IMG/VR virus record: IMGVR_UViG_3300017971_000185
Location: 433,195-497,194 of that record
DNA length: 64,000 nucleotides
Reading direction: 5' to 3' (one strand)
Shown: one piece after another, positions 385 to 37,724 of the stretch
Layout of the letters: every line of letters starts with the position of its first letter
Numbering within the stretch: the first letter of the stretch is position 1
The notes under the pieces: generated by a model
What the model was told of the DNA's origin: nothing
The model's database searches: none
The model's input: only the letters and a program-made list of their open reading frames with translations
Translations under genes and position numbers: made by a program

Positions 385-711
385 ATGGAAAAGAAACCAT
401 CTGAGCGGCGGATCATCATGGCTAAGAAGGTGGCCCGTGATTGGCTGCTGAAACGTGCCAAACCAGAGTATCGATTCCGGGTTTACCACAACCAGGATTC
501 GGCGCCTTATGTGAGTTTGTTGCGGAGCTTTCGGGATGGTCGTTTCAAGCTCGCGGGTGTGGACCAGCTTCCCGATTTGGGGGTGAAGGAAGAGGTCGGC
601 GGTTTCACAGTATGGTCGTCAGACTGGAAGGCGATCATGTCGCTCAAGACCTTCTTTGAGAAGAAGGGGATGGATACGTCGTGGATTTGGACCCGAGATG
701 GTGATCGATGA
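385..711 (+). CDS. Hypothetical protein (KKVARDWL motif)
   Basis: 108-aa ORF; stop overlaps next start (ATGA). Confidence 0.6.
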   Translation: MEKKPSERRIIMAKKVARDWLLKRAKPEYRFRVYHNQDSAPYVSLLRSFRDGRFKLAGVDQLPDLGVKEEVGGFTVWSSDWKAIMSLKTFFEKKGMDTSWIWTRDGDR

Positions 712-1136
712 CCCTCTCACTGATCGAGTCAGCGTTCACGTACCGCTCGGAGAGCGGCGGACAGTCGTGGTACTACACCATCGTCCAGAACATGAATGGT
801 GTGCTTGGGATTCGAGACATCCTCTCGCCCTACGGTCCTCTCTGCGATTCCAACACACAGATTCCGCAATTCGTTCTCGATGATCAGCAGACGGCCATCG
901 GCCAGGTGGAGAATATCTTGGCTACCACAAGTGCGATCAATGGCATTCTGACGTTCACGAACGATACGAGTCAAACGGTGACGTTCGCGACACCCCTTTC
1001 CAACACGAGCTATCGCGTCCAGATTGCTCAACAAGACCCGGTGTACTTCTGGACGACAAACAAAACTCTCACCGGCTTCACCATCAACGCGAGCATCTCG
1101 TTTACGGGGTTCGTGGGCTTCGATCTGTTCGTGTAG
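708..1136 (+). CDS. Putative virion structural protein with C-terminal beta-sandwich (fibre-tip-like) module
   Basis: T/S/N-rich; C-terminal TSQTVTFATPLSNTSYRV...KTLTGFTI resembles the C-terminus of ORF 2207-3835. Confidence 0.45.
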   Translation: MTLSLIESAFTYRSESGGQSWYYTIVQNMNGVLGIRDILSPYGPLCDSNTQIPQFVLDDQQTAIGQVENILATTSAINGILTFTNDTSQTVTFATPLSNTSYRVQIAQQDPVYFWTTNKTLTGFTINASISFTGFVGFDLFV

Positions 1137-1144
1137 GAGGACTC

Positions 1145-2197
1145 ATGTCGCTACGCAAGAGAGTCTTGAAGCTGGCTTATCAACGGGAGGATCTGCGGTC
1201 CTATCTGTTGCCTTTGATCGAGAAGGATGCGGGCGCTCTGGGTAGTCTTTCCAAGCAGATTGAGAAGCTACAGGGTGTCGATAGCGTCAAGGTGATTTCG
1301 GACAAGCCGACTTTGAACGGGAAACGAGAGGTTATCCTTGGGATCTACATGGACGCTGAGATTGGAGCTACGAAAGGTCGTCAACACCTAACGAGGCTCG
1401 TCCGCAAGGAGCTAGACCGCGCGGTATCGAAGTATCCAGTTGTCATGATTCGAATGTTGTCCCCAAGCCCTGGTCTAGATCCCTTCGGTCGTCCGGGGGT
1501 GGGGTGGGACACGCATCGCGAGAGGTTCCAGAAATACTACTCGGAACATCCCTACAAACTCATTTTGGAGACAGAGCCGGGAGTGTTGCGGACGGCCAAG
1601 GACTTTTGGGTGGAGCTTCGCGAGTTGCCTCCGGTGCTTCAGCGGGCTCTCAAGTCCGTGGGATACCGGCGCAAGGACATTCGAGTCGAGCCGGACACGA
1701 CCTACAGTCCGAGCGAAGGGTCGGCCAGTGCTTCGGGACAGCGCGGCTACGTCATCGTCGTCAACATGCAGACGGGTCAGATGAAAACGGAGATGGGCTC
1801 GTGGGGCGGCCCCAACCCCTTCGAGCGCAAGCAGGTTGATCTGGATCGGCGCAACTACCCCATCCCGGCCAACGGAGCTGTGGTTGTTGGCGAATCGGGT
1901 GGTCGTGGCTCCTTTGCCCGCATCAAAGTCAACCCATCCAACCTGTCGGCCATTCTTCCGTCTGGGGATGAGGACAAACTTCCTCCCGATGAGCAGAAGG
2001 CTCTCAACATCATCGGCGGGATCAAGGGCGGTCACCGGGTCCGCTACTTCGAACGCAATAACCTTGGCCCCTACGACTTTCGGGCTAACCCCCTTCTCCA
2101 GTCGCTCGCCAAGAAGGGGATGATCAAAGCCAACCGGGCTGGGGCGATGAAGATCACCACGAAGGGGCGCAACGCCATGACGCGGGAGATCCTCTAG
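1145..2197 (+). CDS. Hypothetical protein with N-terminal LRxxxxxLA tag (putative internal head protein)
   Basis: GGAGG RBS; MSLRKRVLKLAYQREDLRSYLLPLI resembles the N-termini of three other ORFs. Confidence 0.65.
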   Translation: MSLRKRVLKLAYQREDLRSYLLPLIEKDAGALGSLSKQIEKLQGVDSVKVISDKPTLNGKREVILGIYMDAEIGATKGRQHLTRLVRKELDRAVSKYPVVMIRMLSPSPGLDPFGRPGVGWDTHRERFQKYYSEHPYKLILETEPGVLRTAKDFWVELRELPPVLQRALKSVGYRRKDIRVEPDTTYSPSEGSASASGQRGYVIVVNMQTGQMKTEMGSWGGPNPFERKQVDLDRRNYPIPANGAVVVGESGGRGSFARIKVNPSNLSAILPSGDEDKLPPDEQKALNIIGGIKGGHRVRYFERNNLGPYDFRANPLLQSLAKKGMIKANRAGAMKITTKGRNAMTREIL

Positions 2198-2206
2198 GAG
2201 CAACTC

Positions 2207-3835: not shown

Positions 3836-3838
3836 TCA

Positions 3839-4402
3839 ATGAGTGGTGACCCCTTCGATCCCTATGCCAGCATTACGCTGGGCCCCGACACCGATGTGAT
3901 GGACTCCCACATCCAGGGCAAAAAGTTGGATGGGGGTCAGTTTGTTGCGGTTCGGAGCCTGACTGATCGTGAGCGTGAGAAGAATGCGTTGGCGGTTCCG
4001 GCGGTTGCGGGTACGCGCGTTGCTTTCGTGGCAAACATTGGTTCGGTTCTTCACTATGACTACATCCCTGATGAGGGCGTCGAGGGATCGGTTATCATGG
4101 TGCGGACGGCAGAGGGTGACTGCACGAGCCTGGGAGACAATGTGTTCGTGAGATGGGATGACGGGTACTTCATGCCCGTCTCTCGCTACCACCTTCGGCC
4201 AGGAACCTCCGAGGACGCAAACCCTCCCACCATGCGCTTCGCCAGCCTTGGTGACTTGCACGGAACCTTCATTAGCTCGGACGACAAGACAAGTGAGTTA
4301 GTCCACAAGAGCACGAAGGACCTGTGGAGCTTTGAGGAGAAGGACGGCGAGTATGTGATCAGCCGTTTGTTTGATGACACGGGAGAGCCCTTGAAAGGCT
4401 AG
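3839..4402 (+). CDS. Hypothetical protein
   Basis: 187-aa ORF closely spaced within the operon, GC3-rich codons. Confidence 0.65.
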   Translation: MSGDPFDPYASITLGPDTDVMDSHIQGKKLDGGQFVAVRSLTDREREKNALAVPAVAGTRVAFVANIGSVLHYDYIPDEGVEGSVIMVRTAEGDCTSLGDNVFVRWDDGYFMPVSRYHLRPGTSEDANPPTMRFASLGDLHGTFISSDDKTSELVHKSTKDLWSFEEKDGEYVISRLFDDTGEPLKG

Positions 4403-4405
4403 GCC

Positions 4406-4738: not shown

Positions 4739-4774
4739 CGAATCCTCCTATAGAAAAACCCCCTACGGACCCCC

Positions 4775-5443
4775 ATGACTCAGCCCGACCCACAGCGTGT
4801 AGCAGCCATTTACCAGGCTAGGTGCTTGTATTCACGGGCAGAAAGCCTGTTGGCGTCAATGGACCGGATCGCGAGCCAGGAGACGGGAGGCCGCATCAAG
4901 ACGGCTGGAGAGGTCATCTTCAGGAAGGATCGCGGCGGAGACGAGAATCAGTGGGCCTATGCTGATGTTGGGCCATCCGAGCGTGTCATAGGGGATTTCA
5001 ACTATTCGCCCAAGAACCTCAAGCCTCTGGCGCGGGCGCTACGCTCGACGCTGGCTGGATTGGGGCATGTTCTCTCGGCCTACAACGTGTTTGCCAAAAC
5101 CAAGTCGGCGCGTGTGAGCCCGGACGGAAGTCTGGGTGGCAAGGGATTCATCCAGAAGATCTCGGACATGAGACGGCAGTTTATGAATTGTGTCGAGTCC
5201 TTGTCGGCTCTGTCGGACACGCTCTATGACGAAGTGAATGCTCCGCACTGGTCCGTGCTCTCGCGTCAAGAAGACTCCGAGCAGAAACGTGAAGTGCAGG
5301 AGATGATCGAGGACGTGGAGGAGATCCGCAGCGATCCCGAGGAGTGGGCCGAGGAGCAGATCGAAGAAGAGTTTGAGGAAGGCAACGAAGGGGTTGCCAA
5401 GACCGCGAGCCGACTAGCGAGCCGTTGGTTGGAAGGTGCCTAA
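4775..5443 (+). CDS. Hypothetical protein (RVAAIY, KTAG, KTAS motifs)
   Basis: 222-aa ORF; stop overlaps next ATG. Confidence 0.65.
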   Translation: MTQPDPQRVAAIYQARCLYSRAESLLASMDRIASQETGGRIKTAGEVIFRKDRGGDENQWAYADVGPSERVIGDFNYSPKNLKPLARALRSTLAGLGHVLSAYNVFAKTKSARVSPDGSLGGKGFIQKISDMRRQFMNCVESLSALSDTLYDEVNAPHWSVLSRQEDSEQKREVQEMIEDVEEIRSDPEEWAEEQIEEEFEEGNEGVAKTASRLASRWLEGA

Positions 5444-7705: not shown

Positions 7706-7732
7706 GAAACGGCTACTACGGACGGTGATCTG

Positions 7733-9412
7733 ATGACTGCTCTAGCTCTTCAAAGCTGGATCGTTGCTCCCGAGGTAGAGCGGGTGGCGCGGGAGTTTTC
7801 CCCCGAGGAGTGGGAGACGTACAAGAAGGATCACCCTGGCGCAAAGCGGGAGCGTCATACGATCCGTGAGCGCAAGAGGGAGCGTGGGAAGGAAGAGGAG
7901 AAGGCTGAGAAGCCGAAGGGGAAAGCGAACGAGACCAAGGAGGCGCTCAAGGCCGCGAAGCCGAAGATCGAGAGCAAATTCAAGGAGGCGATCGGCGAGC
8001 AGTCGCAGAAGATCGCGGATGGTGTCGATAAGCTCCTGAGTATCTCTGAGGGCTCGACAAGCAAGTTTCTCAAGCATCTACCTACAGCGGGTATCGCTGT
8101 TGGCGCTGCGGTAGGCGCTGCTCTGGGGCCTGAGTGGCTTGATGCTCTGGGTTCTGGCGATCTCGCAACGATGTTGCCAGGGATCAAGGGCACACTGCTC
8201 GCAGGAGCGGCAGGAGCGGCGATGGGAGCTATTCCCGGTAGTGCAACGGTGTTGGCAGGTCTCGGGGCGTTGGGAGTGCTCGCCAAGAAACTTGCCAAGT
8301 GGGCTGGCGGTAAGGAAGGCAAGACAGCCGCCGATTTGGCCGACATGCCTGATGATCTCAAGCAAGCATTGCTCGACTACTTTACGAACGTGACGGATGA
8401 CGAGATGGCGCTAGTCGGGAAGGCGAAGTCCAAAGAGAACGCAGCCAGCCTTGCCGCTGCGGTTCTCAAACAAGAGGAAGAGAAAACAGAAGGTGGGGAG
8501 AAGCAGGCTGCTTTGATGAATAGGTGGTCCTCAATGGAGAACACTAAGCAAGCATGCGTCAACCTCAGAGCGCTGATGGCGTTGTTGCAGGCAATGTATC
8601 AGCACTACTACACAGCACACTGGACAACGCGTGGGGAGCCTTTCTACGGTAAGCATCTCATGTTCCAGCGCATTTATGAGGCAATCGATGAGGAAGTCGA
8701 TTCTCTTGCTGAGAAGTTGGTTGCCTTCTTCGGTGCGGAAGCTGTTGAGCCTGTGGCGCTGGCTTCTTTGATGCAGGGATGGTTGCAGCGTTGGTCTTCG
8801 ATTGAGGATTTACGTCGTAGGTCTCTTCAAGCTGAGAAGGATTTTCAAGAGAGTCTGCGTCTGATCTACGATCAGTTAGAGAAGGAAGGCTCTTTGACGT
8901 TGGGGCTTGATGATTTTTTGGCCGCCATTGCCAATACCCATGAGACTCACACGTATTTGGTGCAGCAGTCACTTGGTGGTGTGTCGCGGGTAGCTACGTT
9001 GGTTGAGGCATGGGGACGAGGATATGGACCAGGACGTGGATATGAGTGTGGATATGGGCCGGGGCCGGGCCGGGGGCCAGGACCGGGCTGGGGTGGATAT
9101 GGGCCGGGGCCGGGATACGGGCCAGGATGGGCAGGATTGCCTGGCGAGATGACGCCTCTCGAAAAGTCCTGGGGTGGCTATTCGTCCTTCCGGCCGATTC
9201 GCCGTGGCGAGGAGGATGAGGACGAGGAAGTCGATGCCGATGACCTGGATCTCGATGCTTCATGGGAAAGTCTCGCGGACGATGAGGGCTATTTCCATTC
9301 GGTTCCGCAGTGGAGCGAGCTACGTGAGCTAGCAGAATCCGGCGAACGAGAGAAGATGCCGAAGACGGACCAAGAGCCCTTTGAAGGGTGGACTCTATCC
9401 GCGACCGGATAG
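7733..9412 (+). CDS. Multidomain protein: PEEW-HP module, Gly/Ala hydrophobic helices, Dps/ferritin-like domain, GYGPG repeats
   Basis: AHWTTRGEPFYGKHLMFQRIYEAIDEEVDSLAE matches the Dps HW..H..F..Y..D..AE signature. Confidence 0.7.
   Translation: MTALALQSWIVAPEVERVAREFSPEEWETYKKDHPGAKRERHTIRERKRERGKEEEKAEKPKGKANETKEALKAAKPKIESKFKEAIGEQSQKIADGVDKLLSISEGSTSKFLKHLPTAGIAVGAAVGAALGPEWLDALGSGDLATMLPGIKGTLLAGAAGAAMGAIPGSATVLAGLGALGVLAKKLAKWAGGKEGKTAADLADMPDDLKQALLDYFTNVTDDEMALVGKAKSKENAASLAAAVLKQEEEKTEGGEKQAALMNRWSSMENTKQACVNLRALMALLQAMYQHYYTAHWTTRGEPFYGKHLMFQRIYEAIDEEVDSLAEKLVAFFGAEAVEPVALASLMQGWLQRWSSIEDLRRRSLQAEKDFQESLRLIYDQLEKEGSLTLGLDDFLAAIANTHETHTYLVQQSLGGVSRVATLVEAWGRGYGPGRGYECGYGPGPGRGPGPGWGGYGPGPGYGPGWAGLPGEMTPLEKSWGGYSSFRPIRRGEEDEDEEVDADDLDLDASWESLADDEGYFHSVPQWSELRELAESGEREKMPKTDQEPFEGWTLSATG
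9013..9135 (+). repeat. Low-complexity G(Y/P/R)GPG coding repeat
   Basis: GRGYGPGRGYECGYGPGPGRGPGPGWGGYGPGPGYGPGW; repeated GGGCCGGGGCC. Confidence 0.85.
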
Positions 9413-9421
9413 GAGGACTGC

Positions 9422-10015: not shown

Positions 10016-10022
10016 GGTCGTT

Positions 10023-10760: not shown

Positions 10761-10766
10761 GTGTGA

Positions 10767-11453
10767 ATGCCGACGAAAGAACAGCTAGATCTCCTTGCTG
10801 ACAGTCCTCCAAATGCCACACGGGTCAAGGTCGTCACGGCCGAAGGGAAAGAGAAGTGGCGAATCCTTCCTGGTTTGGTTGGCCCCGAGGAGCAAGTCCT
10901 TCTCGATACCGACACGATTGCGCTGAGCAGCAAGAAGCGCAGGCCCATCTTCATGACGGGGAAGCCGGGGCGGAAGGTCCGTCCCAAGCGGGATCCCAAA
11001 GATGAGCTAGTCAAGGTCATCGTCAAGGACAAAGAAGAACACATGAAGAAGGATCCTCTTCTGGCTGCGGTTCGCGAGAACCCGGAGTCGGTGGAGGTTC
11101 TGCACGAAACGATCAAGGCCATAGCCAACGAGGTTTCCTCCCTGGAATTCGAGCGCATTGAGGCAGACCGCAAAGGCGAGGGCTCAGCCATGCTCTCGAA
11201 TCGTCGCATCGCGGCGTTGACCAAGATCGGTGACACATGGCTCAAGCGGATGGACCAGATCATGTCCAAGGGCATCGATCTGGAGAGCCCGGCTTTCAAG
11301 GGTGTCTACAACCTGATCATGGAGACGTTTCGCGAGGCCATGTCCTCTGCAAATATCCGTGAGGAGGCCATCAAGCTGACGTTCACCAAATTCAGTCACC
11401 GTGTCGAGGCTGATGATTGGTGGAACGAGGCTCGGATGAGGATGAAGCAGTGA
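10767..11453 (+). CDS. Helical protein, candidate terminase small subunit
   Basis: Directly upstream of and overlapping terL; assignment is positional only. Confidence 0.35.
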   Translation: MPTKEQLDLLADSPPNATRVKVVTAEGKEKWRILPGLVGPEEQVLLDTDTIALSSKKRRPIFMTGKPGRKVRPKRDPKDELVKVIVKDKEEHMKKDPLLAAVRENPESVEVLHETIKAIANEVSSLEFERIEADRKGEGSAMLSNRRIAALTKIGDTWLKRMDQIMSKGIDLESPAFKGVYNLIMETFREAMSSANIREEAIKLTFTKFSHRVEADDWWNEARMRMKQ

Positions 11454-25300: not shown

Positions 25301-25357
25301 GATAAGGGGCTCACGGACGATGAGATTGTGAAGATTCTGAAGGAGGAACGGCCGTGA
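22310..25357 (+). CDS. Polyvalent protein with two HExxH zincin domains and a C-terminal hydrophobic module
   Basis: KHELRH..PQEF; LHELGH..YASTNREEHFCE; FTPEAWKEYKRKHP; Gly/Ala hydrophobic helices. Confidence 0.75.
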   Translation: MEVTTPMRVAGILAYPPKMRQEILDWVKSLYATWAATRARVEIKGHKEDIKEFKADLKEATTPREIERLKDRIEVRQEGIDKASKILKEAIRDGAKGRGRKKSKRDFVTDLGGMPKNYPIEQLQQEIPKIRVGVEFTGQPAPRERAVHGTWNGNTKKLRILLHGRAPDQIFKYREAARTMDTIIKHELRHMVQQMFFQFEAELMERKILERGKSWEKLSPKEQEHIRKSLSRGAPKEYEVGSFALYEDVPKNLQYYLLPQEFFTWLGQSEETFLDEVRTMRVVGGEKDPRPKKKEFDQFVGNPRPIKSKGRVLKKGDPIATHPFFATLWEYDRKRWQRAVRELWKRVQNKLVLPPTRLPSSKRVAARHKTARMAERVAIRHLVARAPMSKLLGDLMGKWELLNRSVDEDLQKGGVSRADFLANRFKGLDEYDIRSLLMRLKSSGRVIWPHMLRAAKLWVEYLLQTKSIPRGQAKKFELSARPFSAAKRPPRDIVAWLEKNKGKYRYLVDAAGWPDKVENGIGGAEDLFTVGPFKVHNTVRETGGQPRTLAWYNPNDDKLYLRPHIKVGEGELHNFLHELGHRYWDKIMSRDVKTKWANHHSMIKYGLGQYERSRPTDLPEIGEPLPIPMQGMRRGGPPIVTDIDDRFIHVLHKPTGRDAKIKKREYWKFLERRAKRGQFPTPYASTNREEHFCEALAMHLLGNLPEPHKSIFDTVVIKGEDPPGMPAKVARMYLAKRFTPEAWKEYKRKHPKADPKRHEIVQPEKGKAPKPKKTVRQKLDHVFTSIKGLSKSVAKSVREAPEKVQKFIVDKSYRDDVTKAAAKTIKEAPGKIKTAVIQSGKAELKAIFKETPRILATLAKERRAPTKAEAKTLYGVGVYVAGTVLAMTTGGPAGGAIGRVALAGAKAFGHSLSLHIGIKAMNQFADEGFLAYEAAESVAQAGGISAVLPVSTSALPGLGQIWDAVSKVVMASEEKSKSESAMDKMIEQLIRIIGEELDKGLTDDEIVKILKEERP

Positions 25358-29925: not shown

Positions 29926-29934
29926 GCGATCTGC

Positions 29935-30468
29935 ATGGAACGCAGGTCAGACGATGTGAATTGGCAGGAGACCACACGGGAATTCACCGTGGGGGATTCT
30001 GTCAGGCTATTCAACGGCGAGGATACCGATGTAGGCCGCGTCGTTGCCGTCTGGCCTGCGATCGGAATGCTCGATCTGCAATTTGCCACGGGGTGGACTC
30101 GTAAGCCGGTCGAGGATGTGGTCCGGCTGGACAAGTGGACTCCGTATGCGCCGCCGAAGACCGAGCACAGTCAAGTTCCAGGCGGTGCGGGTACGGTTCC
30201 TGTCAGCGCAGGCCCGGCAAACAAGCAATCTAGCGTGCGCCGGGTTGCGGAAGCATACGTCAAGAAGGCGCTCTATTGGGCCGCACGAGATCGCCAGTAC
30301 CGACCCACACAAGAGGAGATTGAGACTGGCGAATACATCTGCCCACGATGCAAAGGGTCGATGGGGATGGCTCGCTACAAACGACGCAACGGCATCACTG
30401 AAAGGCTTCTGGCCTGTCATAGGTGTCTCTTCTTGATCAAACCAATGGACGCCGGGTTGGAGGGCTAG
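29935..30468 (+). CDS. Hypothetical protein, SH3-like N-terminus and CxxC..CxxC zinc ribbon
   Basis: FTVGDSVR..GRVVAVWP; CPRCKG..ACHRC; RRVAEAY motif. Confidence 0.6.
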   Translation: MERRSDDVNWQETTREFTVGDSVRLFNGEDTDVGRVVAVWPAIGMLDLQFATGWTRKPVEDVVRLDKWTPYAPPKTEHSQVPGGAGTVPVSAGPANKQSSVRRVAEAYVKKALYWAARDRQYRPTQEEIETGEYICPRCKGSMGMARYKRRNGITERLLACHRCLFLIKPMDAGLEG

Positions 30469-33400
30469 GTGGCTTTCCTCAAGTACGCATACGCTCAGAC
30501 CGTCGAGCCCGCCATATCGGGACGCGGTTGGAGCAAGATCCGCACGGCAAGCGGCGGGTCTGATGCGAATTTGGTCGAGAAGGCCAGCGAGATCCTCGGG
30601 GAAAACTTCGACCCCCATCGGTATCTGCTGACACACGCCACGATCGTCGCGTCCGTGGACGTGGAAGAAGTCCCGAACGTCAAGCTCGGGTCAGTCCTCG
30701 ATCCCAACACGGGACGCCGGATCAACCGGAAGTGGACCGACTACCGGGTCATACCTGAGTGCGACAAATTCATCAACAACAACTGTTTCATTCCTGGGAC
30801 GCTCATCACAATGGCAGATGGCACGGTCAAGGCCATCGAGGACATCTGTGAGGGGGATGAGGTTCTGACGCATCTTGGTCGGCCGAAGCGAGTGACGGCC
30901 ACGATGCGGCGCGATGTCGTTGAGGAATTACGCGAGATCAAGCCGCGAGGAACAACGGAGCGGCTGTATGTCACGGCAGAGCATCCGTTCTATGTGTTTC
31001 GTGAGAACGCATGTGTGAATTGTGGAAGCCCGGCGCGGCAGCATGTCTCATGGAATGCACGCTGCATTTCGCATCTCATAGGGAAGTTTTACTGTTCCAG
31101 CGAGTGTTACTACGCGAAGCGGGTTCCGAAGCGCGAATTGTTGGAAGAGAAACGGGGAGAGTTTGTCGAGGCGAAGGATCTGACAGACCGCGATTTCACT
31201 GCTTCTCCCGTACTGAGAGGTGCAAAGGATGTTGGGCTGACGCTTGGGCAAGCCCGTCTGATTGGATTGTTCTTGGCGGAAGGCTACTACGAGCAGGATA
31301 GTAGAAACGATAATGAGCGAGTTGGGGCGATCTGGGCTTTTCACAAAGATGAAGCTCCTACGCTCGCGCGGCTCGTTCGGGATCTCATGAAGCGGGAGTT
31401 TGGGGTCGAGTGTGTCATACGGCCCCACAAGAACGACAACGGGATTCATGTCACGACAAGGACCCATCGTGACGCGGCGGCCTTCTTCACCAAGTGGGTT
31501 CGCGGAAGTGGATCTAAGACAAAGACTCTCCATCCTGATCTGCTGTTTGCTTCTGCCGACATACAAATGGAAATCGCGCGGGGGTGGCTGGAAGGAGACG
31601 GGTGTTTTCAGGACACACGCACTGAGAAAAAGCCTGGTGATATCCGGCTGACTGGCGATACCTCGAATCGTTCCCTTGCCAGTCAGATGCAGATCATCTT
31701 GCAGCGGCTCGGGATCTCTTCCCACCTGACACGCATAGAATCGCCAGGACGTAAACGGCTGATCGTTGATGGTGAAATCAAGATTGTCAACGATCCCGAG
31801 AAGCCGCGAAACGTATCGTGGGCGCTTGCTTGCGGGGGTGCTTGGGTTGAAGATCTCGTGCAGGATACGGTGTACGAAGAGCCGTATCTTGCAGCCGTCG
31901 AGGAGCGCGGAGGACTTCAAGCTGCGCCCAAGTTGCGCTTCTTGAATGGCTACCACCTGCAAATCATCGAGAACCTCGATACGATCGCTTACGCGGGCCC
32001 TGTCTACAACTTTGATGTTGAAGACGACCACTCGTATGTTGCTAACGGTGTCGCTGTTCACAACTGTGATGCTTGGGCTCGTCCGGTGTTGATGAAGTCG
32101 TACCGGACGTTCATCGGGGCACAAAACTTCTGCGAGCACTTGCAGAAGGAAGAAGAGTCGAAAGGCCGAATCATCGATGCCGTGGCTCGCGATATTGGAC
32201 CATCAGTCTACATTGACATTTTGCTCGCGACGGATCGTCGGCACACAGGTCTCGTGAGGGACATCGAGTCTGGCAAGATGAGCACTCTGAGTATGGGGTG
32301 CTTTCTGGCCGGGACGCAGGTGTCGTTGCAGGACGGCCAGCGGGTGGCGATCGAGGAGGTGGTCCCAGGGGATATGGTGCTGACCCACAAGGGTCGTTTT
32401 CGCGAGGTGCTCAACACGCAGATTCGGACGTATCGAGGAGAGTTGCGTCGGATCAAGGCGGTTGGGGTTTCTTCTACCATTCAGGCGACGGCGAACCATG
32501 GGTTTGAGGTTTTGCGGGCTCCGAAGACGTGCGCTTGTGGGTGTGGAGAGCCCCTTGGGGAGACAAGCTCTATAACGCGCCGCACGACACGTCGTTTCAA
32601 ACGAGGCCACGACAAACGGATCTACAACCCCAACAACACCTATTCGCTGGCGGAAGCCCGGCGGCGGAAGCAGCAGATTACTGATCTCAAAGCGCTTCGT
32701 TTCGAGAAAGTACGAGCGGATGAGCTTGAGGTTGGTGATTTCTTGTGCTTTCCCAAGGTTCGATTTCATCTACAGACTAAAGGCTGGACGGTTGGCAAGG
32801 CAAGGCTGGCTGGCTATTTCTTGGCCGAAGGTTCCTATCTCAAACACAAGGGTGAGCACGTTGAAGTGCAATTCAACTTCTCCATGGAGGAGAAGGACAC
32901 TTATGTTCGTGAGGTAGTCGAGCTTCTTAAGGAGGAGTTTCCCGAGGCTAACGAACCCTGGGTTCAGGACCGGCCTAGTCGGAACACCTGTGTGGTCCAC
33001 ATGACTGGCCGTGATGCCGTGGCTTGGTTCTATAAACACTGCGGTGAGTATAGCCACGGCAAGCGGGTGTCGTTTGAGGCGATGCACGTACCCGCGGAGT
33101 TACACCGGCATCTTGTTGGCGCCTGGATCAATGGTGATGGCACGTTGGGTAAGGACAACAAGACGCTTTCGGGGACGACGACTTCCTATGCCTTGGCGTG
33201 TCAGTTGCATCTGCTATTGACGCGATGCGGTGTTTTTGTGCGGATGGAATGCGCGCAAAATGGAAGAGCGATCGAGCTTGCGGAGGCTGTAGGCGCCGGT
33301 TGGATGCCCGATCCTGAAACGGGTAAGCGTCCGGCCATTACTCTCGCGGTTGGGCTGTCCTCTGCACAACAGCTTCGGGGGTATTCTGACAAGGTTGGCC

Positions 33401-34584
33401 GTCCGTCAGAGGCACAGCAGCAGCTTCGTGTTTTAGATGACCATGTGGTTTTCCCCGTCACCTCTGTTGAGTCGGGCTGGTACGAAGGGCCGGTCTACAA
33501 CATGGAAGTAGAGGAGGACCACACCTATGTGGTTGAGGGTGTGGCAGTTCACAACTGTTCGGTCACCGAGACGATCTGCACGAAGTGTGGAAATGTTGGC
33601 GCTGATGAAACAGAACTTTGCAATCATGTCCGATTTGAGAAGGGCAACTACTTCTACGATGACAAGGGCAACAAGCACAGAGTTGCTGAGCTTTGCGGCC
33701 ACCCCACGCTGGCCAACGGAGGCGTCAACTTCATCGAGGCTTCCTGGGTCGCAACCCCGGCCTTCGGTGGCGCTGTCGCTCGGAACATCCTGACGCCCAC
33801 GGGCATGAGCCCAGAGATGCTTCGCCAGGCTCAGAGGGTTCTGAGCGAGCCTCCGCCACAGTGGCTCGATGGGCTCGCGAAAGCAGCCAGCAAAGAACCA
33901 CCGTCAGACTTCAGCGAGGCTATCCAAGTTTCGCAAGCCGAGTCTCCCGCGAAGTCGCGGACTCGGGTTAGTGACTACTACGCTCCCGATGGTCCCGGAG
34001 CCATCATCGGAGAGCCCGGCAGTGCCCCAGAGGAGATTCTCGGATTCGACTTTGGTGACGATGAGGGCGGCGGCGAAGAGGAGAAGAAGCCGGAAGAGAA
34101 GCCGGAAGCGGGCCCGCTGGACCAGCTTACCGATGCTGTCTACCAGCAGGTTCTCGACCGCGTGACTCAGAAGGTTCAAGACGAGTTAGCAGGGCGGGGG
34201 GAACAGCCTTCCGTGCAAGAGCCTGCAAATTCGACTGGCGAAGACATCATCAAACAAGCCGCCCACAAGCGTGCGTATCGGCTGGGAATCGAGGCCATCG
34301 TGAAGTCGGCCTCAGGAGACGCCCATCTGATTGACGCCGTTGCGCGATTCAACTCGCGCATGGGCGTGAAGGTTCCCAGAGCGCTCTACATGGCCGCTCT
34401 GAGTTTAGGGCCGCTATCCAAACACGGCTCGATTGAGGAGTGGGCTGTGAATGCTCACAGCGCACTCAACCGTACACCGTCCTTGGGAGAGACCAAGACG
34501 CTTCTGCGCCTTGGAAAACTTCTCGATCAAATGGCGGCTTTCACCAACCACAACCACAAAGTCGAGGAATCTCGCAATGGGTAA
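30469..34584 (+). CDS. Prohead (maturation) protease with two inteins; ~525 aa after splicing
   Basis: Spliced LSMG-CSVTETICTKCG..LCNH..FIEASWVATPAF resembles Zn-finger-type prohead proteases; lies upstream of scaffold and MCP. Confidence 0.78.
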   Translation: MAFLKYAYAQTVEPAISGRGWSKIRTASGGSDANLVEKASEILGENFDPHRYLLTHATIVASVDVEEVPNVKLGSVLDPNTGRRINRKWTDYRVIPECDKFINNNCFIPGTLITMADGTVKAIEDICEGDEVLTHLGRPKRVTATMRRDVVEELREIKPRGTTERLYVTAEHPFYVFRENACVNCGSPARQHVSWNARCISHLIGKFYCSSECYYAKRVPKRELLEEKRGEFVEAKDLTDRDFTASPVLRGAKDVGLTLGQARLIGLFLAEGYYEQDSRNDNERVGAIWAFHKDEAPTLARLVRDLMKREFGVECVIRPHKNDNGIHVTTRTHRDAAAFFTKWVRGSGSKTKTLHPDLLFASADIQMEIARGWLEGDGCFQDTRTEKKPGDIRLTGDTSNRSLASQMQIILQRLGISSHLTRIESPGRKRLIVDGEIKIVNDPEKPRNVSWALACGGAWVEDLVQDTVYEEPYLAAVEERGGLQAAPKLRFLNGYHLQIIENLDTIAYAGPVYNFDVEDDHSYVANGVAVHNCDAWARPVLMKSYRTFIGAQNFCEHLQKEEESKGRIIDAVARDIGPSVYIDILLATDRRHTGLVRDIESGKMSTLSMGCFLAGTQVSLQDGQRVAIEEVVPGDMVLTHKGRFREVLNTQIRTYRGELRRIKAVGVSSTIQATANHGFEVLRAPKTCACGCGEPLGETSSITRRTTRRFKRGHDKRIYNPNNTYSLAEARRRKQQITDLKALRFEKVRADELEVGDFLCFPKVRFHLQTKGWTVGKARLAGYFLAEGSYLKHKGEHVEVQFNFSMEEKDTYVREVVELLKEEFPEANEPWVQDRPSRNTCVVHMTGRDAVAWFYKHCGEYSHGKRVSFEAMHVPAELHRHLVGAWINGDGTLGKDNKTLSGTTTSYALACQLHLLLTRCGVFVRMECAQNGRAIELAEAVGAGWMPDPETGKRPAITLAVGLSSAQQLRGYSDKVGRPSEAQQQLRVLDDHVVFPVTSVESGWYEGPVYNMEVEEDHTYVVEGVAVHNCSVTETICTKCGNVGADETELCNHVRFEKGNYFYDDKGNKHRVAELCGHPTLANGGVNFIEASWVATPAFGGAVARNILTPTGMSPEMLRQAQRVLSEPPPQWLDGLAKAASKEPPSDFSEAIQVSQAESPAKSRTRVSDYYAPDGPGAIIGEPGSAPEEILGFDFGDDEGGGEEEKKPEEKPEAGPLDQLTDAVYQQVLDRVTQKVQDELAGRGEQPSVQEPANSTGEDIIKQAAHKRAYRLGIEAIVKSASGDAHLIDAVARFNSRMGVKVPRALYMAALSLGPLSKHGSIEEWAVNAHSALNRTPSLGETKTLLRLGKLLDQMAAFTNHNHKVEESRNG
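30784..32064 (+). mobile_element. LAGLIDADG intein 1 (427 aa) in protease
   Basis: N|CFIPGT..; PVYNFDVEDDHSYVANGVAVHN|C; LIGLFLAEG and ARGWLEGDG. Confidence 0.92.
32299..33555 (+). mobile_element. LAGLIDADG intein 2 (419 aa) in protease
   Basis: G|CFLAGT..; PVYNMEVEEDHTYVVEGVAVHN|C; LAGYFLAEG and LVGAWINGDG. Confidence 0.92.
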
Positions 34585-35962
34585 TCGTCAACGACTGACC
34601 TGGGATAAGGGAGCCGCTGCATCGGACAAAGAAGCGTCCCCGCCACCGCAAATTCCGGCCAATGACCGGACCGAGAAGTCCGAGCATCCGGCGGCACAGC
34701 CCGATCCCGACTACGCGAAATACAAGGAAGGCGACCCGTCTGCCTGGGCCGAGGACGTACATCCTGGTCCCTACGACACGGCCGCTGCTCCTGCAACGCC
34801 CGGCTACAGAGAGCCAGCAGACCACCCGGCCGCCAAACCCGGCAAGCCCATGAGTGCGTCTGACCAGAGCGAGGAGGAGATTCGCAGGGCCACCGAGTTG
34901 AAGGCGGCGAAGTGCATTCGCGTCGCTGCCGTGATGCTCGGCGATGTCCCCGAGGGCGTCGATGAGGAAAAGCATGTCCTGGCCATCGAGAGCCAGGCTC
35001 TCGATCTCATGGACCTTCCCGACGATCACCTTCAGTCGACTCTGGAGCGTCTCGGAATGGCCGACGATGAGGAATCCGACAAGGAAGCCTCCATGGACAT
35101 CACAGCCCGTCTCGACAGGCTTGAGTCTGGCCTGGAGCGCATCGCAGAGAAGATGGGCATCGCCGGCAATCTGTTCGGCCAGATGGATGAGCCGATCATC
35201 GAAGAGCCCATGGAGGAAGACCTGCTGGAGACTCCACTGGAGGAAGAGGACGCGATGCTGGAAGAGATGCTGGCTCAAGATGAGCCGGTAGTCGAGGAAG
35301 ACGCCATGCTGGAGGAGATGCTCTCCCAGGATGACGACGATCTCGATGACGACGAGGAAGAGATGCTCGCGGCCATGCTCTGCGGACGTACCGCGGCCGA
35401 CGAGGAGGAGGAAAAGGAAGAGGACAAGGAGGGCGGCAAGAAGGCCAAGAAGGGTGAGGACGATGAGGATGAGGAGGCCGATGAGGACAAGGAGAGCGCC
35501 TGCAAGAAGGCCGAGGAGGAGGAGAAGAAGGAGGAGAAAGAGCCCGAGGAGAAAGAGGCTTCCCTCGACATCCAGCTTGAAGACCCAATGGGCCTGATGG
35601 ATACGTCAGCCCCAGACAGCGACACAGATCTGGAGCTTCTCTACCGCACTGCCGAGGACGATGAGGACAAGGGCGGCAAGCCCGAAAAGGGCAAGATCCC
35701 TTCGCAGTTTGAGAAGAAGGACAAGGACGAGGAAGAGGGCAAGAAGGAAGAGGACAAGGCCGAGGAGAAGGAGGAAGAGGCCCAGGATGAGGGTGAGAAG
35801 GAAGGCGGCAAGAAGAAAGGTACTGATCTCCGTCCGCAGCCGAAGGAGCCCAGCACAGGGGCTCAGGCTCTCGGCACCGTCCAGAAGTCGGCGTCGAGCG
35901 AGGTCAGCGATCTCAGCAGCCTGTGGGAGCACGCTCCCGACGTGTCCTCAGTGTTCAAGTAG
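34577..35962 (+). CDS. Acidic scaffold-like protein
   Basis: GAGGA RBS, ATG 34577; very E/D/K-rich; lies between protease and capsid genes. Confidence 0.65.
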   Translation: MGNRQRLTWDKGAAASDKEASPPPQIPANDRTEKSEHPAAQPDPDYAKYKEGDPSAWAEDVHPGPYDTAAAPATPGYREPADHPAAKPGKPMSASDQSEEEIRRATELKAAKCIRVAAVMLGDVPEGVDEEKHVLAIESQALDLMDLPDDHLQSTLERLGMADDEESDKEASMDITARLDRLESGLERIAEKMGIAGNLFGQMDEPIIEEPMEEDLLETPLEEEDAMLEEMLAQDEPVVEEDAMLEEMLSQDDDDLDDDEEEMLAAMLCGRTAADEEEEKEEDKEGGKKAKKGEDDEDEEADEDKESACKKAEEEEKKEEKEPEEKEASLDIQLEDPMGLMDTSAPDSDTDLELLYRTAEDDEDKGGKPEKGKIPSQFEKKDKDEEEGKKEEDKAEEKEEEAQDEGEKEGGKKKGTDLRPQPKEPSTGAQALGTVQKSASSEVSDLSSLWEHAPDVSSVFK

Positions 35963-35970
35963 GACTTTCG

Positions 35971-36027
35971 CCTACCTGCCCTTTTCATCGAGGGCAGGTA
36001 GGTAATCGGGTTCCACCATCGGTGGAA
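35971..36027 (+). promoter_or_regulatory. Two stem-loops upstream of the decoration/MCP genes
   Basis: CCTACCTGCCCT/AGGGCAGGTAGG 12-bp stem and TTCCACC/GGTGGAA; no U-tract. Confidence 0.5.
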
Positions 36028-36156
36028 TGACTATACGCACCCATATAAGTATCGGAGCTTGGTGAGGGTTGGTCTTTGACCACCATTCTGGGGGTCGCCC
36101 CGTCAAGCCGCAATCCACCAAACCTGTGAACAGGGAGCAAAAGGAGCCATAGAAAA

Positions 36157-36837
36157 ATGGCGTTGCTTGGACAGGCGAGTGGTGGTTTCACGGAGTCGTC
36201 CTCGGCTCTCCGAATTCTCCATGTGGGTGTGCGTAACACCGTGGGGGTTCTGACCGAGGATAGCTTCACGCAAACCAACCCTCCCGTAACTACGGTGGCT
36301 GCTCAGATTTCCACTCAGTGCGATACGTCAGTGCTGGGTGTTCTGTCTGGGTCGGTCGCTTTCACGCGCGTTGACGCGGGGGACAACTTCATCGGTGGTC
36401 CCGTTGAGCACGGTCTTGGCAATCAAGCATTCCAGATCAAGCCGGTCGGATGCTTCATCAACACCGCGGTCGGAAACGCATTCGAGAATCAGCCCGGTCC
36501 CGCAAGTGGGAAGGGCCCCTACGTCTCGGCTCAGGGAACCTACGGGAATGCCCTCTTCGAGAGCCAGGTCATCGAGGCAGCTACCGTTGGTGGTGGCGTC
36601 CTGGCGGCCGGTACGGACATCGTCTACTCGACTGGTATGCGCCTGTTTGCTTCACGCAACGGGTACTTGCAGCCAATGGAGTCGGCGCAAGCTGGCGCTG
36701 CAACCTCGTTCCTGAACGCGGCCCACTCGGTCGAGATCACGAACGGCATTGTGGTAGCAGATGTAACCCTCATCGGCATCCTCAAGATGCCCCCTGACGC
36801 AACCATGAATGAGTTGGTCTACGACCAGCGCATCTAG
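36157..36837 (+). CDS. Putative head decoration/cement protein
   Basis: Immediately upstream of MCP; small-residue-rich, beta-type composition. Confidence 0.55.
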   Translation: MALLGQASGGFTESSSALRILHVGVRNTVGVLTEDSFTQTNPPVTTVAAQISTQCDTSVLGVLSGSVAFTRVDAGDNFIGGPVEHGLGNQAFQIKPVGCFINTAVGNAFENQPGPASGKGPYVSAQGTYGNALFESQVIEAATVGGGVLAAGTDIVYSTGMRLFASRNGYLQPMESAQAGAATSFLNAAHSVEITNGIVVADVTLIGILKMPPDATMNELVYDQRI

Positions 36838-36851
36838 GGGAGGACAAAACG

Positions 36852-37724
36852 ATGACGGTTGACAACGCAGTCAAACAGCGCATCATCAGCGACTACATCA
36901 AGACCGCTGCTGGGCGTCACAAGCTGGCCGCGTCCATGACGCAGCCTCTCCGCACGCGGCGTGACTACACGTCTGTGGGTCGGCGCACGTTCCTCGTGGA
37001 GCAACTCCCCGATGGCGCACTGCCGATCTACGACAAGGATCCCGATGTCACGGCGTATGTCGTCGGCGAGGAAGGCGAGAACATTCTCGCTGTCACCAAG
37101 CCGCGGCGCGTGGTGTTCCCACTCTTCGAGATCGCGAGCTTGCCCGAGATCCCGCTGACCCAGATCAAGGAGCGGCGCTTCGACCTGATCGAGCGTGCGC
37201 AAGATCTGGCGAGGGCTCAGATCCAAGCCGCGGAGGACGAGAGGGTGTTCGCCATCCTCGACGCTATCGCCACTGTTGGATTCGACTCGCTTCCGGGCCA
37301 GTTGAACCCCGACGTGCCGGTGGTCGCTCCCATTTCTGGTGCCGTCCTGGCCGACGCATTCAGTCTCATCGAGCGTCACGACCTTCGGGTTGCTCGTGTG
37401 TACATGAATGCGCGCGACTATGCCGACATCAGGAAGTTTGGTCGGGACATCTTGGATATCGAGAGTCAGCGCGACTTGCTGAAGACCGGTCTCCAGGCAA
37501 CCCTGTGGGGCGCGCAGATCATCACCAGCCGGCTCGTTCCGGTTGGCACGGTCTATGTGTGCTGCGAGCCCGAGTTGTTCGGACGCATCCCGGTGCGTAC
37601 AGAACTCACGGTCCTCTCGGCCGACGACCCCCGCGCCCGCACCATCGGGTTCTCAGTTTTTGAGAATCTCGGAATCGGTGCCTACAACCCGCGTGGGCTC
37701 ACTCGACTGTCTGTCACCCGCTAG
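36852..37724 (+). CDS. Major capsid protein (HK97/encapsulin-like fold)
   Basis: GGAGG RBS; 290 aa; VEQLPDGALPIYDKD, FPLFEIAS.PEI, RAQIQAAED; strongly biased codons; followed by a terminator. Confidence 0.82.
   Translation: MTVDNAVKQRIISDYIKTAAGRHKLAASMTQPLRTRRDYTSVGRRTFLVEQLPDGALPIYDKDPDVTAYVVGEEGENILAVTKPRRVVFPLFEIASLPEIPLTQIKERRFDLIERAQDLARAQIQAAEDERVFAILDAIATVGFDSLPGQLNPDVPVVAPISGAVLADAFSLIERHDLRVARVYMNARDYADIRKFGRDILDIESQRDLLKTGLQATLWGAQIITSRLVPVGTVYVCCEPELFGRIPVRTELTVLSADDPRARTIGFSVFENLGIGAYNPRGLTRLSVTR

What the first reader, a model, noticed from the sequence alone, without database searches (positions are those of the whole stretch)
385..36920. Pervasive [RK]-[VTQE]-A motif delimiting domains across the head module
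Seen: KKVARDWL, RVAAIY, IKTAG, AKTAS, RVAREF, GKTAAD, EKQAA, SRVAT, KRVARQYL, MRVAFQYRLKTAG, GRVASQHL, KRVAARHKTARMAERVAIRHL, AKVARMYL, DKTAAA, RVAAKTAA, RRVAEAY, DKEAS (x2), GRTAAD, QKSAS and MCP IKTAA. They often fall at boundaries; for example the Dps domain lies between EKQAA and SRVAT. The motif appears sparse in the accessory region (judged by eye, not counted). Inference: prohead-protease cleavage or packaging sites that turn the giant ORFs into polyproteins released inside the capsid.
Basis: partly seen in the sequence, partly recalled or inferred. Interest (0 to 1): 0.65.

Follow-up and report, generated by a model that had tools for sequence, protein, structure and literature searches.

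The report
Head-cargo tag and cleavage motif
A short amino-acid signature (Arg/Lys, then Val/Thr, then Ala, often extended to RVAxRYL) marks the ends of protein modules in the head genes of a 497-kb megaphage and its relatives; it most likely labels proteins for uptake into the capsid and shows the maturation protease where to cut.

Summary
Among all 8000 tripeptides, RVA and KTA are the two most over-represented in the head ORFs. They are 3.7-fold denser there than in the rest of the 497-kb genome. The codons at the sites vary, and the reversed motif is not enriched.

The same enrichment appears in phage G, Tunturi_5, LR745208 and six metagenomic head modules.

Two overlapping signals emerge:
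- **RVAxRYL tag:** a helix-like motif at the N- or C-terminus of cargo modules, and at the junctions where modules are fused into the giant ORFs. Hundreds of metagenomic homologues carry it in the same positions.
- **[KR]-x-A-[ASG] sites:** these are enriched in scaffolds. Four lie at conserved positions flanking the catalytic core of the protease, which has the T4 gp21/herpesvirus assemblin fold.

The giant ORFs are fusions of modules that stand alone in other phages, and inserted cassettes are flanked by duplicated K-x-A.

The cited MCP site (IKTAA) is not conserved; Pro replaces Ala in about half of the closest homologues.

Cleavage and packaging are inferred, not shown. This is a new variant of a known kind (T4 capsid-targeting sequence and protease sites; polyvalent proteins).

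The parts
427..447 (+). N-terminal RVAxRYL-type tag (KVARDWL, aa 15-21) of the small ORF 385-711
   Evidence: PSSM score 21.1 bits; listed
4796..4816 (+). N-terminal tag (RVAAIYQ, aa 8-14) of ORF 4775-5443
   Evidence: PSSM 15.6 bits
5399..5431 (+). C-terminal K-T-A plus ASRWL tag (aa 209-219 of 222) of ORF 4775-5443
   Evidence: PSSM 15.1 bits; resembles the C-terminal end of the LR745208 topoisomerase ORF
7781..7798 (+). N-terminal tag (RVAREF, aa 17-22) of the Dps-containing ORF 7733-9412
   Evidence: similar to the N-terminus of the module C family
8501..8998 (+). Ferritin/Dps domain (aa 278-415) bracketed by KQAA (aa 257) and RVAT (aa 419)
   Evidence: Pfam PF00210, E 6.5e-8; sites
17802..17822 (+). 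N-terminal tag (KIAKRYL, aa 6-12) of giant ORF 17787-22319
   Evidence: PSSM 20.9 bits
17928..18236 (+). 2H phosphoesterase module (aa 48-150)
   Evidence: PF13563, E 5e-10 when searched alone
18654..18674 (+). Junction tag (RVARQYL, aa 290-296) directly before the HEMGHH module
   Evidence: PSSM 22.3 bits; stand-alone homologues start here, some with the same tag
18675..19889 (+). HEMGHH zincin-like module (aa 297-701), ending in the conserved ILPxIK[IVT]A
   Evidence: 162 homologues, many stand-alone at about 410 aa or fused to Topo IB, NUDIX, CCA or 2H domains; alignment A2
19890..20303 (+). Cys-rich inserted cassette (aa 702-836) flanked by IKIA (698-701) and LKTA (836-839)
   Evidence: Absent in P0154, where IKVA is followed directly by the sequence that follows LKTA here
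20481..20537 (+). Cluster KIA / RVAFQY / KTA (aa 899-917) after an acidic spacer
21132..21152 (+). Junction tag (RVASQHL, aa 1116-1122) before the CCA-adding / poly(A) polymerase domain (aa 1150-1385)
   Evidence: PSSM 16.1 bits; PF01743, E 2.5e-19
22331..22342 (+). RVAG (aa 8-11) at the N-terminus of ORF 22310-25357
   Evidence: low-pLDDT segment 1-10
22346..23365 (+). Module A (aa 13-352; HELRH)
   Evidence: Stand-alone homologue P0003 (341 aa) covers aa 13-352
23396..23455 (+). Tandem tags RVAARH / KTA / RVAIRHL (aa 363-382) in the A-B linker
   Evidence: PSSM 20.7 and 17.6 bits; pLDDT below 50 over aa 356-386
23468..24457 (+). Module B (aa 387-716; HELGHR zincin-like peptidase family)
   Evidence: Hundreds of homologues of about 350 aa that end at the equivalent of aa ~716
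24491..24511 (+). Junction tag KVARMYL (aa 728-734)
   Evidence: Top PSSM hit, 23.4 bits; pLDDT below 50 over aa 723-735; stand-alone module C proteins begin with this tag
24512..25354 (+). Module C (aa 735-1015)
   Evidence: Stand-alone homologues P0005, P0013 and P0084 of about 305 aa
25411..26178 (+). Topoisomerase IB module ending in LDKTAAA (aa 271-275)
   Evidence: PF01028, E 4.8e-24; the domain end aligns with LKQATK in LR745208 and LDGKTAA in L008
26179..26856 (+). Inserted cassette (aa 276-497, containing RVAAKTAA at 395-402) closed by REAT (498-501)
   Evidence: LR745208 runs from K-Q-A straight into the sequence that follows R-E-A here
29404..29919 (+). C-terminal module of ORF 25354-29925; a separate gene in LR745208
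   Evidence: 32% identity to L001:11541-12176(-)
30241..30261 (+). Tag-like RVAEAYV (aa 103-109) in ORF 29935-30468
   Evidence: PSSM 19.1 bits; conserved as RVASAYI in the LR745208 orthologue
30469..34584 (+). Prohead protease in three exteins (aa 1-105, 532-610, 1030-1371) split by two inteins. K/R-x-A-small sites at aa 25 (RTAS), 1262 (KQAA), 1279 (KSAS) and an AKAAS just after the catalytic core
   Evidence: family-wide conservation of these sites; fold of an intein-free relative
34586..35962 (+). Acidic scaffold-like protein with 7 [KR].A[ASG] sites (1.4 expected)
   Evidence: p 6e-4; synteny with the scaffolds of phage G, Tunturi_5 and LR745208
36900..36911 (+). MCP N-arm KTAA (aa 17-20); probably not a functional instance
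   Evidence: About 55% of the 120 closest homologues have K-T-P here

Best explanation
The pattern is a genuine protein-level sorting and processing code of the head of a phage-G-like megaphage. It has two overlapping parts.

1. An amphipathic, basic element with consensus S-A-x-R-V-A-[AS]-R-[YWF]-L. It sits at the N- or C-terminus of cargo modules and survives at the junctions where modules have been fused into the giant polyvalent ORFs (2H phosphoesterase, zincin-like modules, CCA-adding enzyme, Topo IB, Dps). I infer that it is a docking tag that brings these proteins into the prohead.

2. A shorter [KR]-x-A-[ASG] site. It occurs at module ends, many times in the scaffold, and at four conserved positions flanking the catalytic core of the protease. 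I infer that it is the cleavage site of the assemblin/gp21-fold maturation protease. Cleavage would be after the Ala by analogy with herpesvirus assemblin, but the scissile bond is not determined. Cutting would separate the fused modules, degrade the scaffold and trim the protease inside the capsid.

Shown: enrichment, head specificity, conservation across the clade, terminal or junction position, modular fusion, and the protease fold.

Inferred: binding, packaging, cleavage, and which enzyme cuts.
For: Enrichment and controls:
- RVA and KTA are the top two of 8000 tripeptides in the head ORFs.
- RVA|KTA is 3.7-fold denser in head ORFs than in the rest of the genome, p 2e-8.
- Codons vary at the sites, and the reversed motif is not enriched.

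Replication in relatives:
- Phage G: KTA is the top tripeptide (11 vs 2.2) and is 9.6-fold denser in the head module than in 100 kb of other genome.
- Tunturi_5 and LR745208 show the same enrichment, as do six metagenomic head loci with z 2.4-7.2.

The tag:
- A PSSM built from homologues gives 22 hits above 12 bits in the genome against 1 in a shuffled proteome. Thirteen of the 22 lie within 30 aa of a terminus (p 1.6e-4), including proteins far from the head module.
- In 149 homologues, 36% of the sites lie in the terminal 30 aa, against 9% expected.
- Arg at +4 (59%) and Leu at +6 (40%) are conserved although the search pattern did not require them.

Modules:
- ORF 22310-25357 consists of three modules that each stand alone elsewhere, with the tags exactly at aa 363-382 and 728 and in low-pLDDT linkers.
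- The HEMGHH and Topo modules are stand-alone or differently fused elsewhere.
- Inserted cassettes are flanked by duplicated K-x-A.

Cleavage sites:
- Scaffolds are enriched in [KR].A[ASG]: 7 vs 1.4, 9 vs 2.3 and 11 vs 3.0.
- In 121 proteases, K-x-A-N-A (aa 4-9), R-K-[VT]-A-[GAS] (25-30), K-A-A-S (288-291) and V-R-V-A-S-S (377-382) are conserved in flexible regions outside the core.
- The protease core matches T4 gp21 (Z 10.0, 139 aa, 3.0 A) and herpesvirus assemblins (Z 7-8.9).
Against: - No experimental cleavage or packaging data could be reached. The phage G mass-spectrometry paper is not held.
- The MCP site is not conserved.
- The phage G scaffold gp21 has no [KR].A[ASG] site.
- The position after the Ala in RVAx is very variable, which is odd for a P1' residue.
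- Tags 6-10 aa from a C-terminus have no obvious use as cut sites.
- Conserved sites in the protease could be structural.
- The one complex prediction gave no answer.
- About half of the matches to the loose pattern are chance.
Confidence: 0.55

Rival explanations
1. The motif is only a docking or targeting tag, comparable to an encapsulin cargo-loading peptide. The giant proteins are packaged and ejected uncut. K-x-A at module ends is part of the same binding element.
For: - The tag is located at termini, including extreme C-termini, always with the complete RVAxxYL retained.
- The position after the Ala is variable.
- The N4 virion RNA polymerase is a precedent for an unprocessed polyvalent protein (PMC5512222).
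Against: - Short K-x-A-[ASG] sites without the aromatic part are enriched in scaffolds and flank the protease core.
- Inserted cassettes carry duplicated K-x-A on both sides.
Confidence: 0.2
2. The sites are self-processing sites of the embedded zincin-like metallopeptidase modules (HEMGHH, HELGHR, HELRH) of polyvalent proteins, not of the prohead protease.
For: - There are three HExxH modules in the giant ORFs.
- Tags commonly flank stand-alone members of these families at both ends.
- Processing by such peptidases was proposed for polyvalent proteins (PMC5512222).
Against: - The motif is equally enriched in the scaffold, protease and small head proteins of phage G and Tunturi_5.
- No homologue of the HEMGHH module was found in any cultured phage.
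- Four motif sites are conserved in the assemblin-fold protease itself.
Confidence: 0.12
3. The motif is an inherited linker or helix-cap sequence that travels with mobile modules and has no signalling role.
For: In the module C family the tag is part of the homologous N-terminus, so it is conserved by descent.
Against: - The same motif accompanies unrelated modules: Topo IB, CCA, 2H, Dps, zincins and small ORFs.
- It occurs at either terminus.
- It is enriched only in head-associated proteins across phages that differ widely in GC content.
Confidence: 0.08
4. The pattern is chance, a composition effect or a DNA-level word.
For: - The loose pattern [RK][VTQE]A is expected about 35 times by chance.
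- Lys is richer in head ORFs.
Against: - z 6 against within-protein shuffles.
- Directional asymmetry against the reversed motif.
- 26 different codon combinations at 30 sites.
- Replicated in ten independent head modules.
Confidence: 0.02

Closest known systems
Phage T4 capsid-targeting sequence (CTS) and gp21 protease sites (I/L-x-E)
   Same: - Short terminal peptides direct internal proteins into the prohead.
- An assemblin-fold protease then cuts scaffold, cargo and itself at a short motif (PMC5694885; PMC12991175).
- The protease here shares the gp21 fold (Z 10.0).
   Different: - The motif differs: basic-x-Ala rather than x-x-Glu.
- The tag can be at the C-terminus or internal.
- The cargo is giant multi-enzyme fusions.
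- Nothing is shown experimentally here.
phiKZ / 201phi2-1 / SPN3US prohead protease motif (S/A/G-x-E, A-x-E)
   Same: Giant phages in which many head and ejection proteins are processed at a short motif, including C-terminal autocleavage of the protease.
   Different: - A different phage lineage (HK97-type 290-aa MCP with a separate scaffold).
- A different motif.
- Here the sites also delimit fused modules.
Herpesvirus assemblin sites ((V/L/I)-x-A followed by S; own knowledge)
   Same: - Same protease fold (Z 7-8.9).
- Ala followed by Ser/Ala/Gly, as in K-[VT]-A-[ASG].
   Different: - A basic residue at the third position before the cut is typical here.
- The position of the scissile bond here is an analogy, not a result.
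Polyvalent proteins of phages and conjugative elements (Iyer et al. 2017, PMC5512222)
   Same: Giant multi-domain virion-delivered proteins with zincin-like peptidases and nucleic-acid enzymes, for which processing was predicted.
   Different: In the passages of that paper retrieved by keyword search (processing, cleavage, linker) I found no linear motif at the domain junctions. Here a specific junction/terminus motif and its head-module restriction are documented.
Encapsulin cargo-loading peptides (own knowledge)
   Same: A short terminal peptide addresses diverse cargo, including ferritin-like proteins, to the interior of an HK97-fold shell.
   Different: - A different sequence.
- Binding to the MCP is untested; the prediction gave no answer.
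- Phage cargo is later ejected.

Membership tests
Assemblin / T4 gp21-like prohead serine protease | Assemblin fold of the catalytic core | tested here: met
   The AF2 model of intein-free relative L023:7458-8846 (pLDDT 80.5) matches T4 gp21 over aa 47-254 (Z 10.0, rmsd 3.0 A, 139 aa) and herpesvirus proteases (Z 7-8.9). The window exteins align to this family.
Assemblin / T4 gp21-like prohead serine protease | Conserved catalytic His and Ser | tested here: inconclusive
   H128, S179 and H230 (F-x-E-H, L-S-M-G-C) are invariant in 121 sequences, and intein 2 is inserted right after L-S-M-G. They were not superposed on the gp21 catalytic residues.
Assemblin / T4 gp21-like prohead serine protease | Gene sits between portal and scaffold/MCP | tested here: met
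   The order portal, cargo ORFs, protease, scaffold, decoration protein, MCP holds in the window, phage G, Tunturi_5 and LR745208.
Prohead-protease cleavage motif | Over-represented in scaffold, protease termini and internal head proteins; absent from non-head proteins | tested here: met
Prohead-protease cleavage motif | Located in accessible linkers or propeptides | tested here: met
   6 of 7 sites lie in low-pLDDT linkers of ORF 22310-25357. Protease sites 1-3 lie in low-confidence flanks.
Prohead-protease cleavage motif | New termini observed at the motif in virions | not testable with these tools
   The phage G proteomics paper is not held, and no supplement is held for the 2025 paper.
Capsid-targeting (cargo-loading) peptide | Short conserved peptide at the N- or C-terminus of otherwise unrelated cargo | tested here: met
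   13 of 22 genome hits are terminal (p 1.6e-4). The modules carrying the tag are unrelated.
Capsid-targeting (cargo-loading) peptide | Binds a shell or core component | tested here: inconclusive
   The MCP plus tag-peptide complex prediction gave no verdict.
Capsid-targeting (cargo-loading) peptide | Necessary and sufficient for packaging | not testable with these tools
   Needs reporter fusions in a cultured relative such as phage G.
Polyvalent proteins (Iyer et al. 2017) | Many unrelated enzymatic domains plus zincin-like peptidase in one phage polypeptide, with shuffled architectures | tested here: met
   2H, HExxH, CCA, Topo IB and other modules are present. The same modules are fused in other orders elsewhere.
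Polyvalent proteins (Iyer et al. 2017) | Match to the Pfam MPTase/LPD families defined in that work | tested here: not met
   No significant Pfam hit for modules A, B, C or the HEMGHH module. The zincin assignment rests on HExxH and weak hits only.

The most novel reading that the evidence does not exclude
One shared address label, [KR]-[VT]-A with its RVAxRYL extension, is used by scaffold, protease and all cargo of a very large, mostly uncultivated megaphage clade (more than 2000 MCP relatives). It would dock them on the inside of the prohead, and the protease would then cut within the label to release everything. The packaged and ejected proteome of these phages (RNA-repair enzymes, Topo IB, Dps, peptidases) could then be read from sequence alone, and the tag could be used to load foreign proteins into capsids.
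Probability: 0.3. Interest if true: 0.8.

Novelty: new variant of a known kind. Interest (0 to 1): 0.62.

Why it matters
Megaphages are almost all uncultivated, so which of their hundreds of proteins travel inside the capsid is unknown. A sequence signature that marks head cargo and its processing sites would help in several ways:
- It would allow virion cargo to be predicted directly from metagenomes.
- It would explain how 1000-1500-aa multi-enzyme ORFs are handled.
- It suggests these phages inject an RNA-repair and DNA-topology toolkit.

It also gives concrete, cheap tests in phage G, the one long-cultivated relative, where KTA is likewise the most enriched tripeptide of the head module.

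Tried and rejected
- **Complex prediction.** MCP plus the 45-aa tag segment of ORF 22310-25357 returned no verdict. This is not evidence either way.
- **Phage G paper.** The structure and mass-spectrometry paper (PMC7316594) is not held.
- **2025 phage G paper.** It has no held supplement and names none of the head gene products I searched for.
- **PDB entry 6wkk.** It carries nearly full-length gp27 and so says nothing about MCP processing.
- **Close relatives of ORF 22310-25357.** The viral contigs held only identical copies.
- **Tagged proteins outside the head module.** Pfam and PHROGs gave almost no annotation.
- **Protease and scaffold.** Pfam gave nothing.
- **HEMGHH module.** The only phage record with a homologue is the uncultured-phage assembly LR745208; no cultured phage has one.
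- **Literature.** Searches for a described tag or motif found only the T4 and phiKZ-type precedents.
- **MCP IKTAA as a conserved site.** Rejected.
- **DNA-word or composition explanations.** Rejected.
- **Inteins.** Because the protease is split by inteins, its exteins were searched and aligned piece by piece by reference. The joined extein sequence was not built or searched.
- Not used.

Full report
**Context.** The window is the last 64 kb of a 497,194-bp single-contig genome. It encodes a head module on the + strand:
- TerL (11417-13588).
- A portal with an intein-like insert (14281-17748).
- Three giant ORFs: 17787-22319 (1510 aa), 22310-25357 (1015 aa) and 25354-29925 (1523 aa).
- A small ORF (29935-30468).
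- A prohead protease interrupted by two inteins (30469-34584).
- An acidic scaffold-like protein (34586-35962), a decoration-like protein, and a 290-aa HK97-type MCP (36852-37724).

The nearest records are:
- The uncultured 485-kb phage LR745208 (MCP 90% identical, TerL 49%).
- Tunturiibacter phage Tunturi_5 (MCP 48%).
- Bacillus phage G (MCP 38%).
- Cluster C mycobacteriophages.

I shuffled residues within each protein and scored all 8000 tripeptides.
- RVA (18 observed, 5.1 expected) and KTA (12 vs 3.5) came out first and second in the head ORFs.
- The other variants (KVA, RTA, REA, KEA and the Ser forms) are not individually significant.
- ORFs to the right of the MCP show 9 against 15.5 expected.

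Across the whole genome, RVA|KTA is 3.7-fold denser in head ORFs (p 2e-8). This holds even though other regions also contain giant ORFs. The 30 sites use 26 different codon combinations, and the other frames are not enriched, so the signal is at the protein level. The reversed tripeptides have the same composition and serve as a control. Forward vs reverse is 63 vs 28 in head ORFs and 12 vs 12 in non-head ORFs. About half of the loose matches must still be chance.

**Is it conserved?** The same unbiased test on relatives gives:
- Phage G: KTA is the top tripeptide in the head module (11 vs 2.2).
- Tunturi_5: KVA, KQA and RVA are enriched.
- LR745208: KTA, RVA and KQA are enriched.

Six further metagenomic head loci, found with the protease, are all enriched for [RK][VTQI]A (z 2.4 to 7.2). 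RVA is the top tripeptide in one of them and KQA in another. In phage G, KTA is 9.6-fold denser in the first 30 kb than in 100 kb of replication and tail regions. Phage G is AT-rich and uses Lys where the window uses Arg. That is further evidence for selection on the peptide.

**An extended motif.** Sites in head ORFs have a context: Pro at -4, a hydrophobic residue at -1, Ala/Arg at +3, Tyr at +5 and Leu at +6. This context is absent from the 230 matches elsewhere in the genome.

A full search with ORF 22310-25357 against 1.84 billion representative proteins found 503 relatives. I collected 90 [RK][VI]A..[YWFH] instances from them. These show Arg at +4 in 59% and Leu at +6 in 40%, although neither position was imposed. 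The consensus is S-A-x-R-V-A-[AS]-R-[YWF]-L. Of all such sites in the relatives, 36% lie within 30 residues of a terminus, against 9% expected.

A PSSM built from these foreign instances gives 22 hits above 12 bits in the window's genome and 1 in a shuffled proteome.
- Eleven hits are in the window's head ORFs.
- The other eleven are elsewhere in the genome, mostly at the very N- or C-terminus of otherwise unannotated proteins. One of them is a HAD / polynucleotide-kinase-like protein.
- Overall, 13 of 22 are terminal (p 1.6e-4).

**Do the sites delimit modules?** Yes.

*ORF 22310-25357* resolves into three modules that each exist as complete proteins elsewhere:
- Module A, aa 13-352 (for example P0003, 341 aa).
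- Module B, aa ~387-716, a large family of about 350-aa HELGHR proteins.
- Module C, aa ~728-1015 (for example P0005, P0013 and P0084, about 305 aa).

The tandem tags at aa 363-382 and the tag at aa 728 lie exactly between these modules. Stand-alone module B and C proteins carry the tag at their own N- or C-termini. An AlphaFold model (mean pLDDT 73) has its low-confidence linkers at aa 1-10, 356-386 and 723-735. Six of the seven [RK][VT]A sites fall in such residues.

*ORF 17787-22319* reads, in order:
- Tag (aa 6).
- 2H phosphoesterase.
- Tag (aa 290).
- HEMGHH module.
- IKIA (aa 698).
- Cys-rich insert.
- LKTA (aa 837).
- Acidic spacer.
- KIA / RVAFQY / KTA cluster (aa 899-917).
- Module of unknown function.
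- Tag (aa 1116).
- CCA-adding enzyme.

The HEMGHH module has many stand-alone homologues of about 410 aa. Elsewhere it is fused to Topo IB, NUDIX, CCA or 2H domains. It always ends in ILPxIK[IVT]A, often followed by RVAxRY.

*ORF 25354-29925*:
- The Topo IB domain ends at LDKTAAA. This aligns with LKQATK in LR745208 and LDGKTAA in another contig.
- The C-terminal module is a separate gene in LR745208.

Twice, a cassette that is present in the window but absent in a relative is bracketed by duplicated K-x-A. This is the pattern expected if each module brings its own boundary signal.

**The protease and the short site.** An intein-free relative of the protease (L023) was modelled with 120 homologues (pLDDT 80.5). 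Its core, aa 47-254, matches T4 gp21 (Z 10.0, 3.0 A over 139 residues) and herpesvirus assemblins (Z 7-8.9).

In the 121-sequence alignment, four K/R-x-A-small sites are conserved outside the core:
- L-K-x-A-N-A at aa 4-9.
- R-K-[VTAQ]-A-[GAS] at aa 25-30.
- K-A-A-[SKN] at aa 288-291, just after the core.
- V-R-V-A-S-S at aa 377-382, in the C-terminal helical domain.

The first three lie in low-confidence flanks. The window, LR745208, Tunturi_5 and phage G share these positions.

Scaffold proteins of the window, Tunturi_5 and LR745208 hold 7, 9 and 11 [KR].A[ASG] sites against 1.4, 2.3 and 3.0 expected. Self-trimming and scaffold degradation at a short motif are what T4, phiKZ and SPN3US proteases do at x-x-Glu. 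Ala followed by a small residue recalls the herpesvirus assemblin site (own knowledge).

**What does not fit.**
- The MCP example fails. Among the 120 closest MCPs, about 55% read K-T-P instead of K-T-A at that position.
- The phage G scaffold gp21 has no [KR].A[ASG] site.
- The residue after RVA is highly variable.
- Tags only 6-10 residues from a C-terminus make little sense as cut sites. Yet they always keep the whole RVAxxYL.

These last points argue that the long form is a binding element. A single attempt to predict binding of a tag peptide to the MCP returned no verdict. No proteomic evidence could be reached.

**Interpretation.** The best-supported reading is a two-part code:
- The RVAxRYL element is a capsid-targeting or docking tag on cargo modules.
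- [KR]-x-A-[ASG] is the maturation-protease site. It separates fused modules, destroys the scaffold and trims the protease.

Because the tag begins with R-V-A, the two may be one system in which cutting inside the docking element releases the contents from the shell. That unification is speculative.

Rivals are:
- A tag with no cleavage.
- Self-processing by the three embedded HExxH modules, as proposed in general for polyvalent proteins (PMC5512222).
- A functionless inherited linker.

Chance and DNA-level explanations are excluded.

**Comparison and novelty.** The system works like the T4 capsid-targeting sequence plus gp21 sites, and like the phiKZ/SPN3US processing motif. The giant ORFs fit the polyvalent-protein concept. 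What is new:
- The motif itself.
- Its bipartite form.
- Its use at either terminus and at fusion junctions.
- Its spread over a very large uncultivated clade (2030 MCP relatives, contigs up to about 550 kb).

I did not find it described, but the key phage G paper was not readable. It is therefore a new variant of a known kind, with a direct experimental test available in phage G.

Noticed in passing
window 14281-17748 and 30469-34584: The portal carries an intein-like insert (aa ~381-904). The protease carries two inteins (aa 106-531 with a LAGLIDADG domain; aa 611-1029), inserted at N-N-N|C and directly after the conserved L-S-M-G motif. The portal insert and a protease intein are 25% identical to each other.
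   Followed up: partly
window 60104-61216: A 370-aa ORF with 33% identity to the MCP over aa 127-229. This is a second MCP-like gene far from the head module.
   Followed up: no
window 17787-22319; G000 211901-212431: There is an RNA-repair theme among tagged proteins. A 2H phosphoesterase (PF13563) and a CCA-adding enzyme sit in one giant ORF, and a tagged HAD / polynucleotide-kinase-like protein is encoded elsewhere in the genome. They may be packaged to counter host tRNA or RNA cleavage.
   Followed up: partly
window 36852-37724: The MCP is extremely conserved: at least 88% identical in more than 120 clusters at 90% identity, with 2030 relatives and contigs up to about 530 kb. TerL is only 49% identical to the nearest record, LR745208.
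   Followed up: no
window 19440-19457, 22865-22882, 24038-24055: Three HExxH motifs (HEMGHH, HELRH, HELGH) lie in the giant ORFs. The modules have no significant Pfam family; there are only weak hits to SprT-like, DUF5700 and eCIS_core.
   Followed up: partly
window 37386-37406 (MCP aa 179-185): The invariant in-fold MCP segment D-L-R-V-A-R-V-[YF]-M resembles the RVAxRYL tag. It could be coincidence, or the tag could mimic an MCP element.
   Followed up: no
G000 30269-32782, 182520-183050, 188080-188925, 224807-227593, 361878-362183, 400329-401546: Proteins outside the head module carry strong terminal tags. One 694-aa protein is tagged at both ends. None has a Pfam or PHROG family. They are candidates for unrecognised head cargo.
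   Followed up: partly
L018 (LR745208 459990-467252): The stand-alone, tagged HEMGHH module of LR745208 lies far from its head module, next to a TnpB-like ORF.
   Followed up: no
window 22310-22319 and 25354-25357: The three giant ORFs overlap by 10 and 4 nt at their stop/start junctions, which suggests translational coupling.
   Followed up: no
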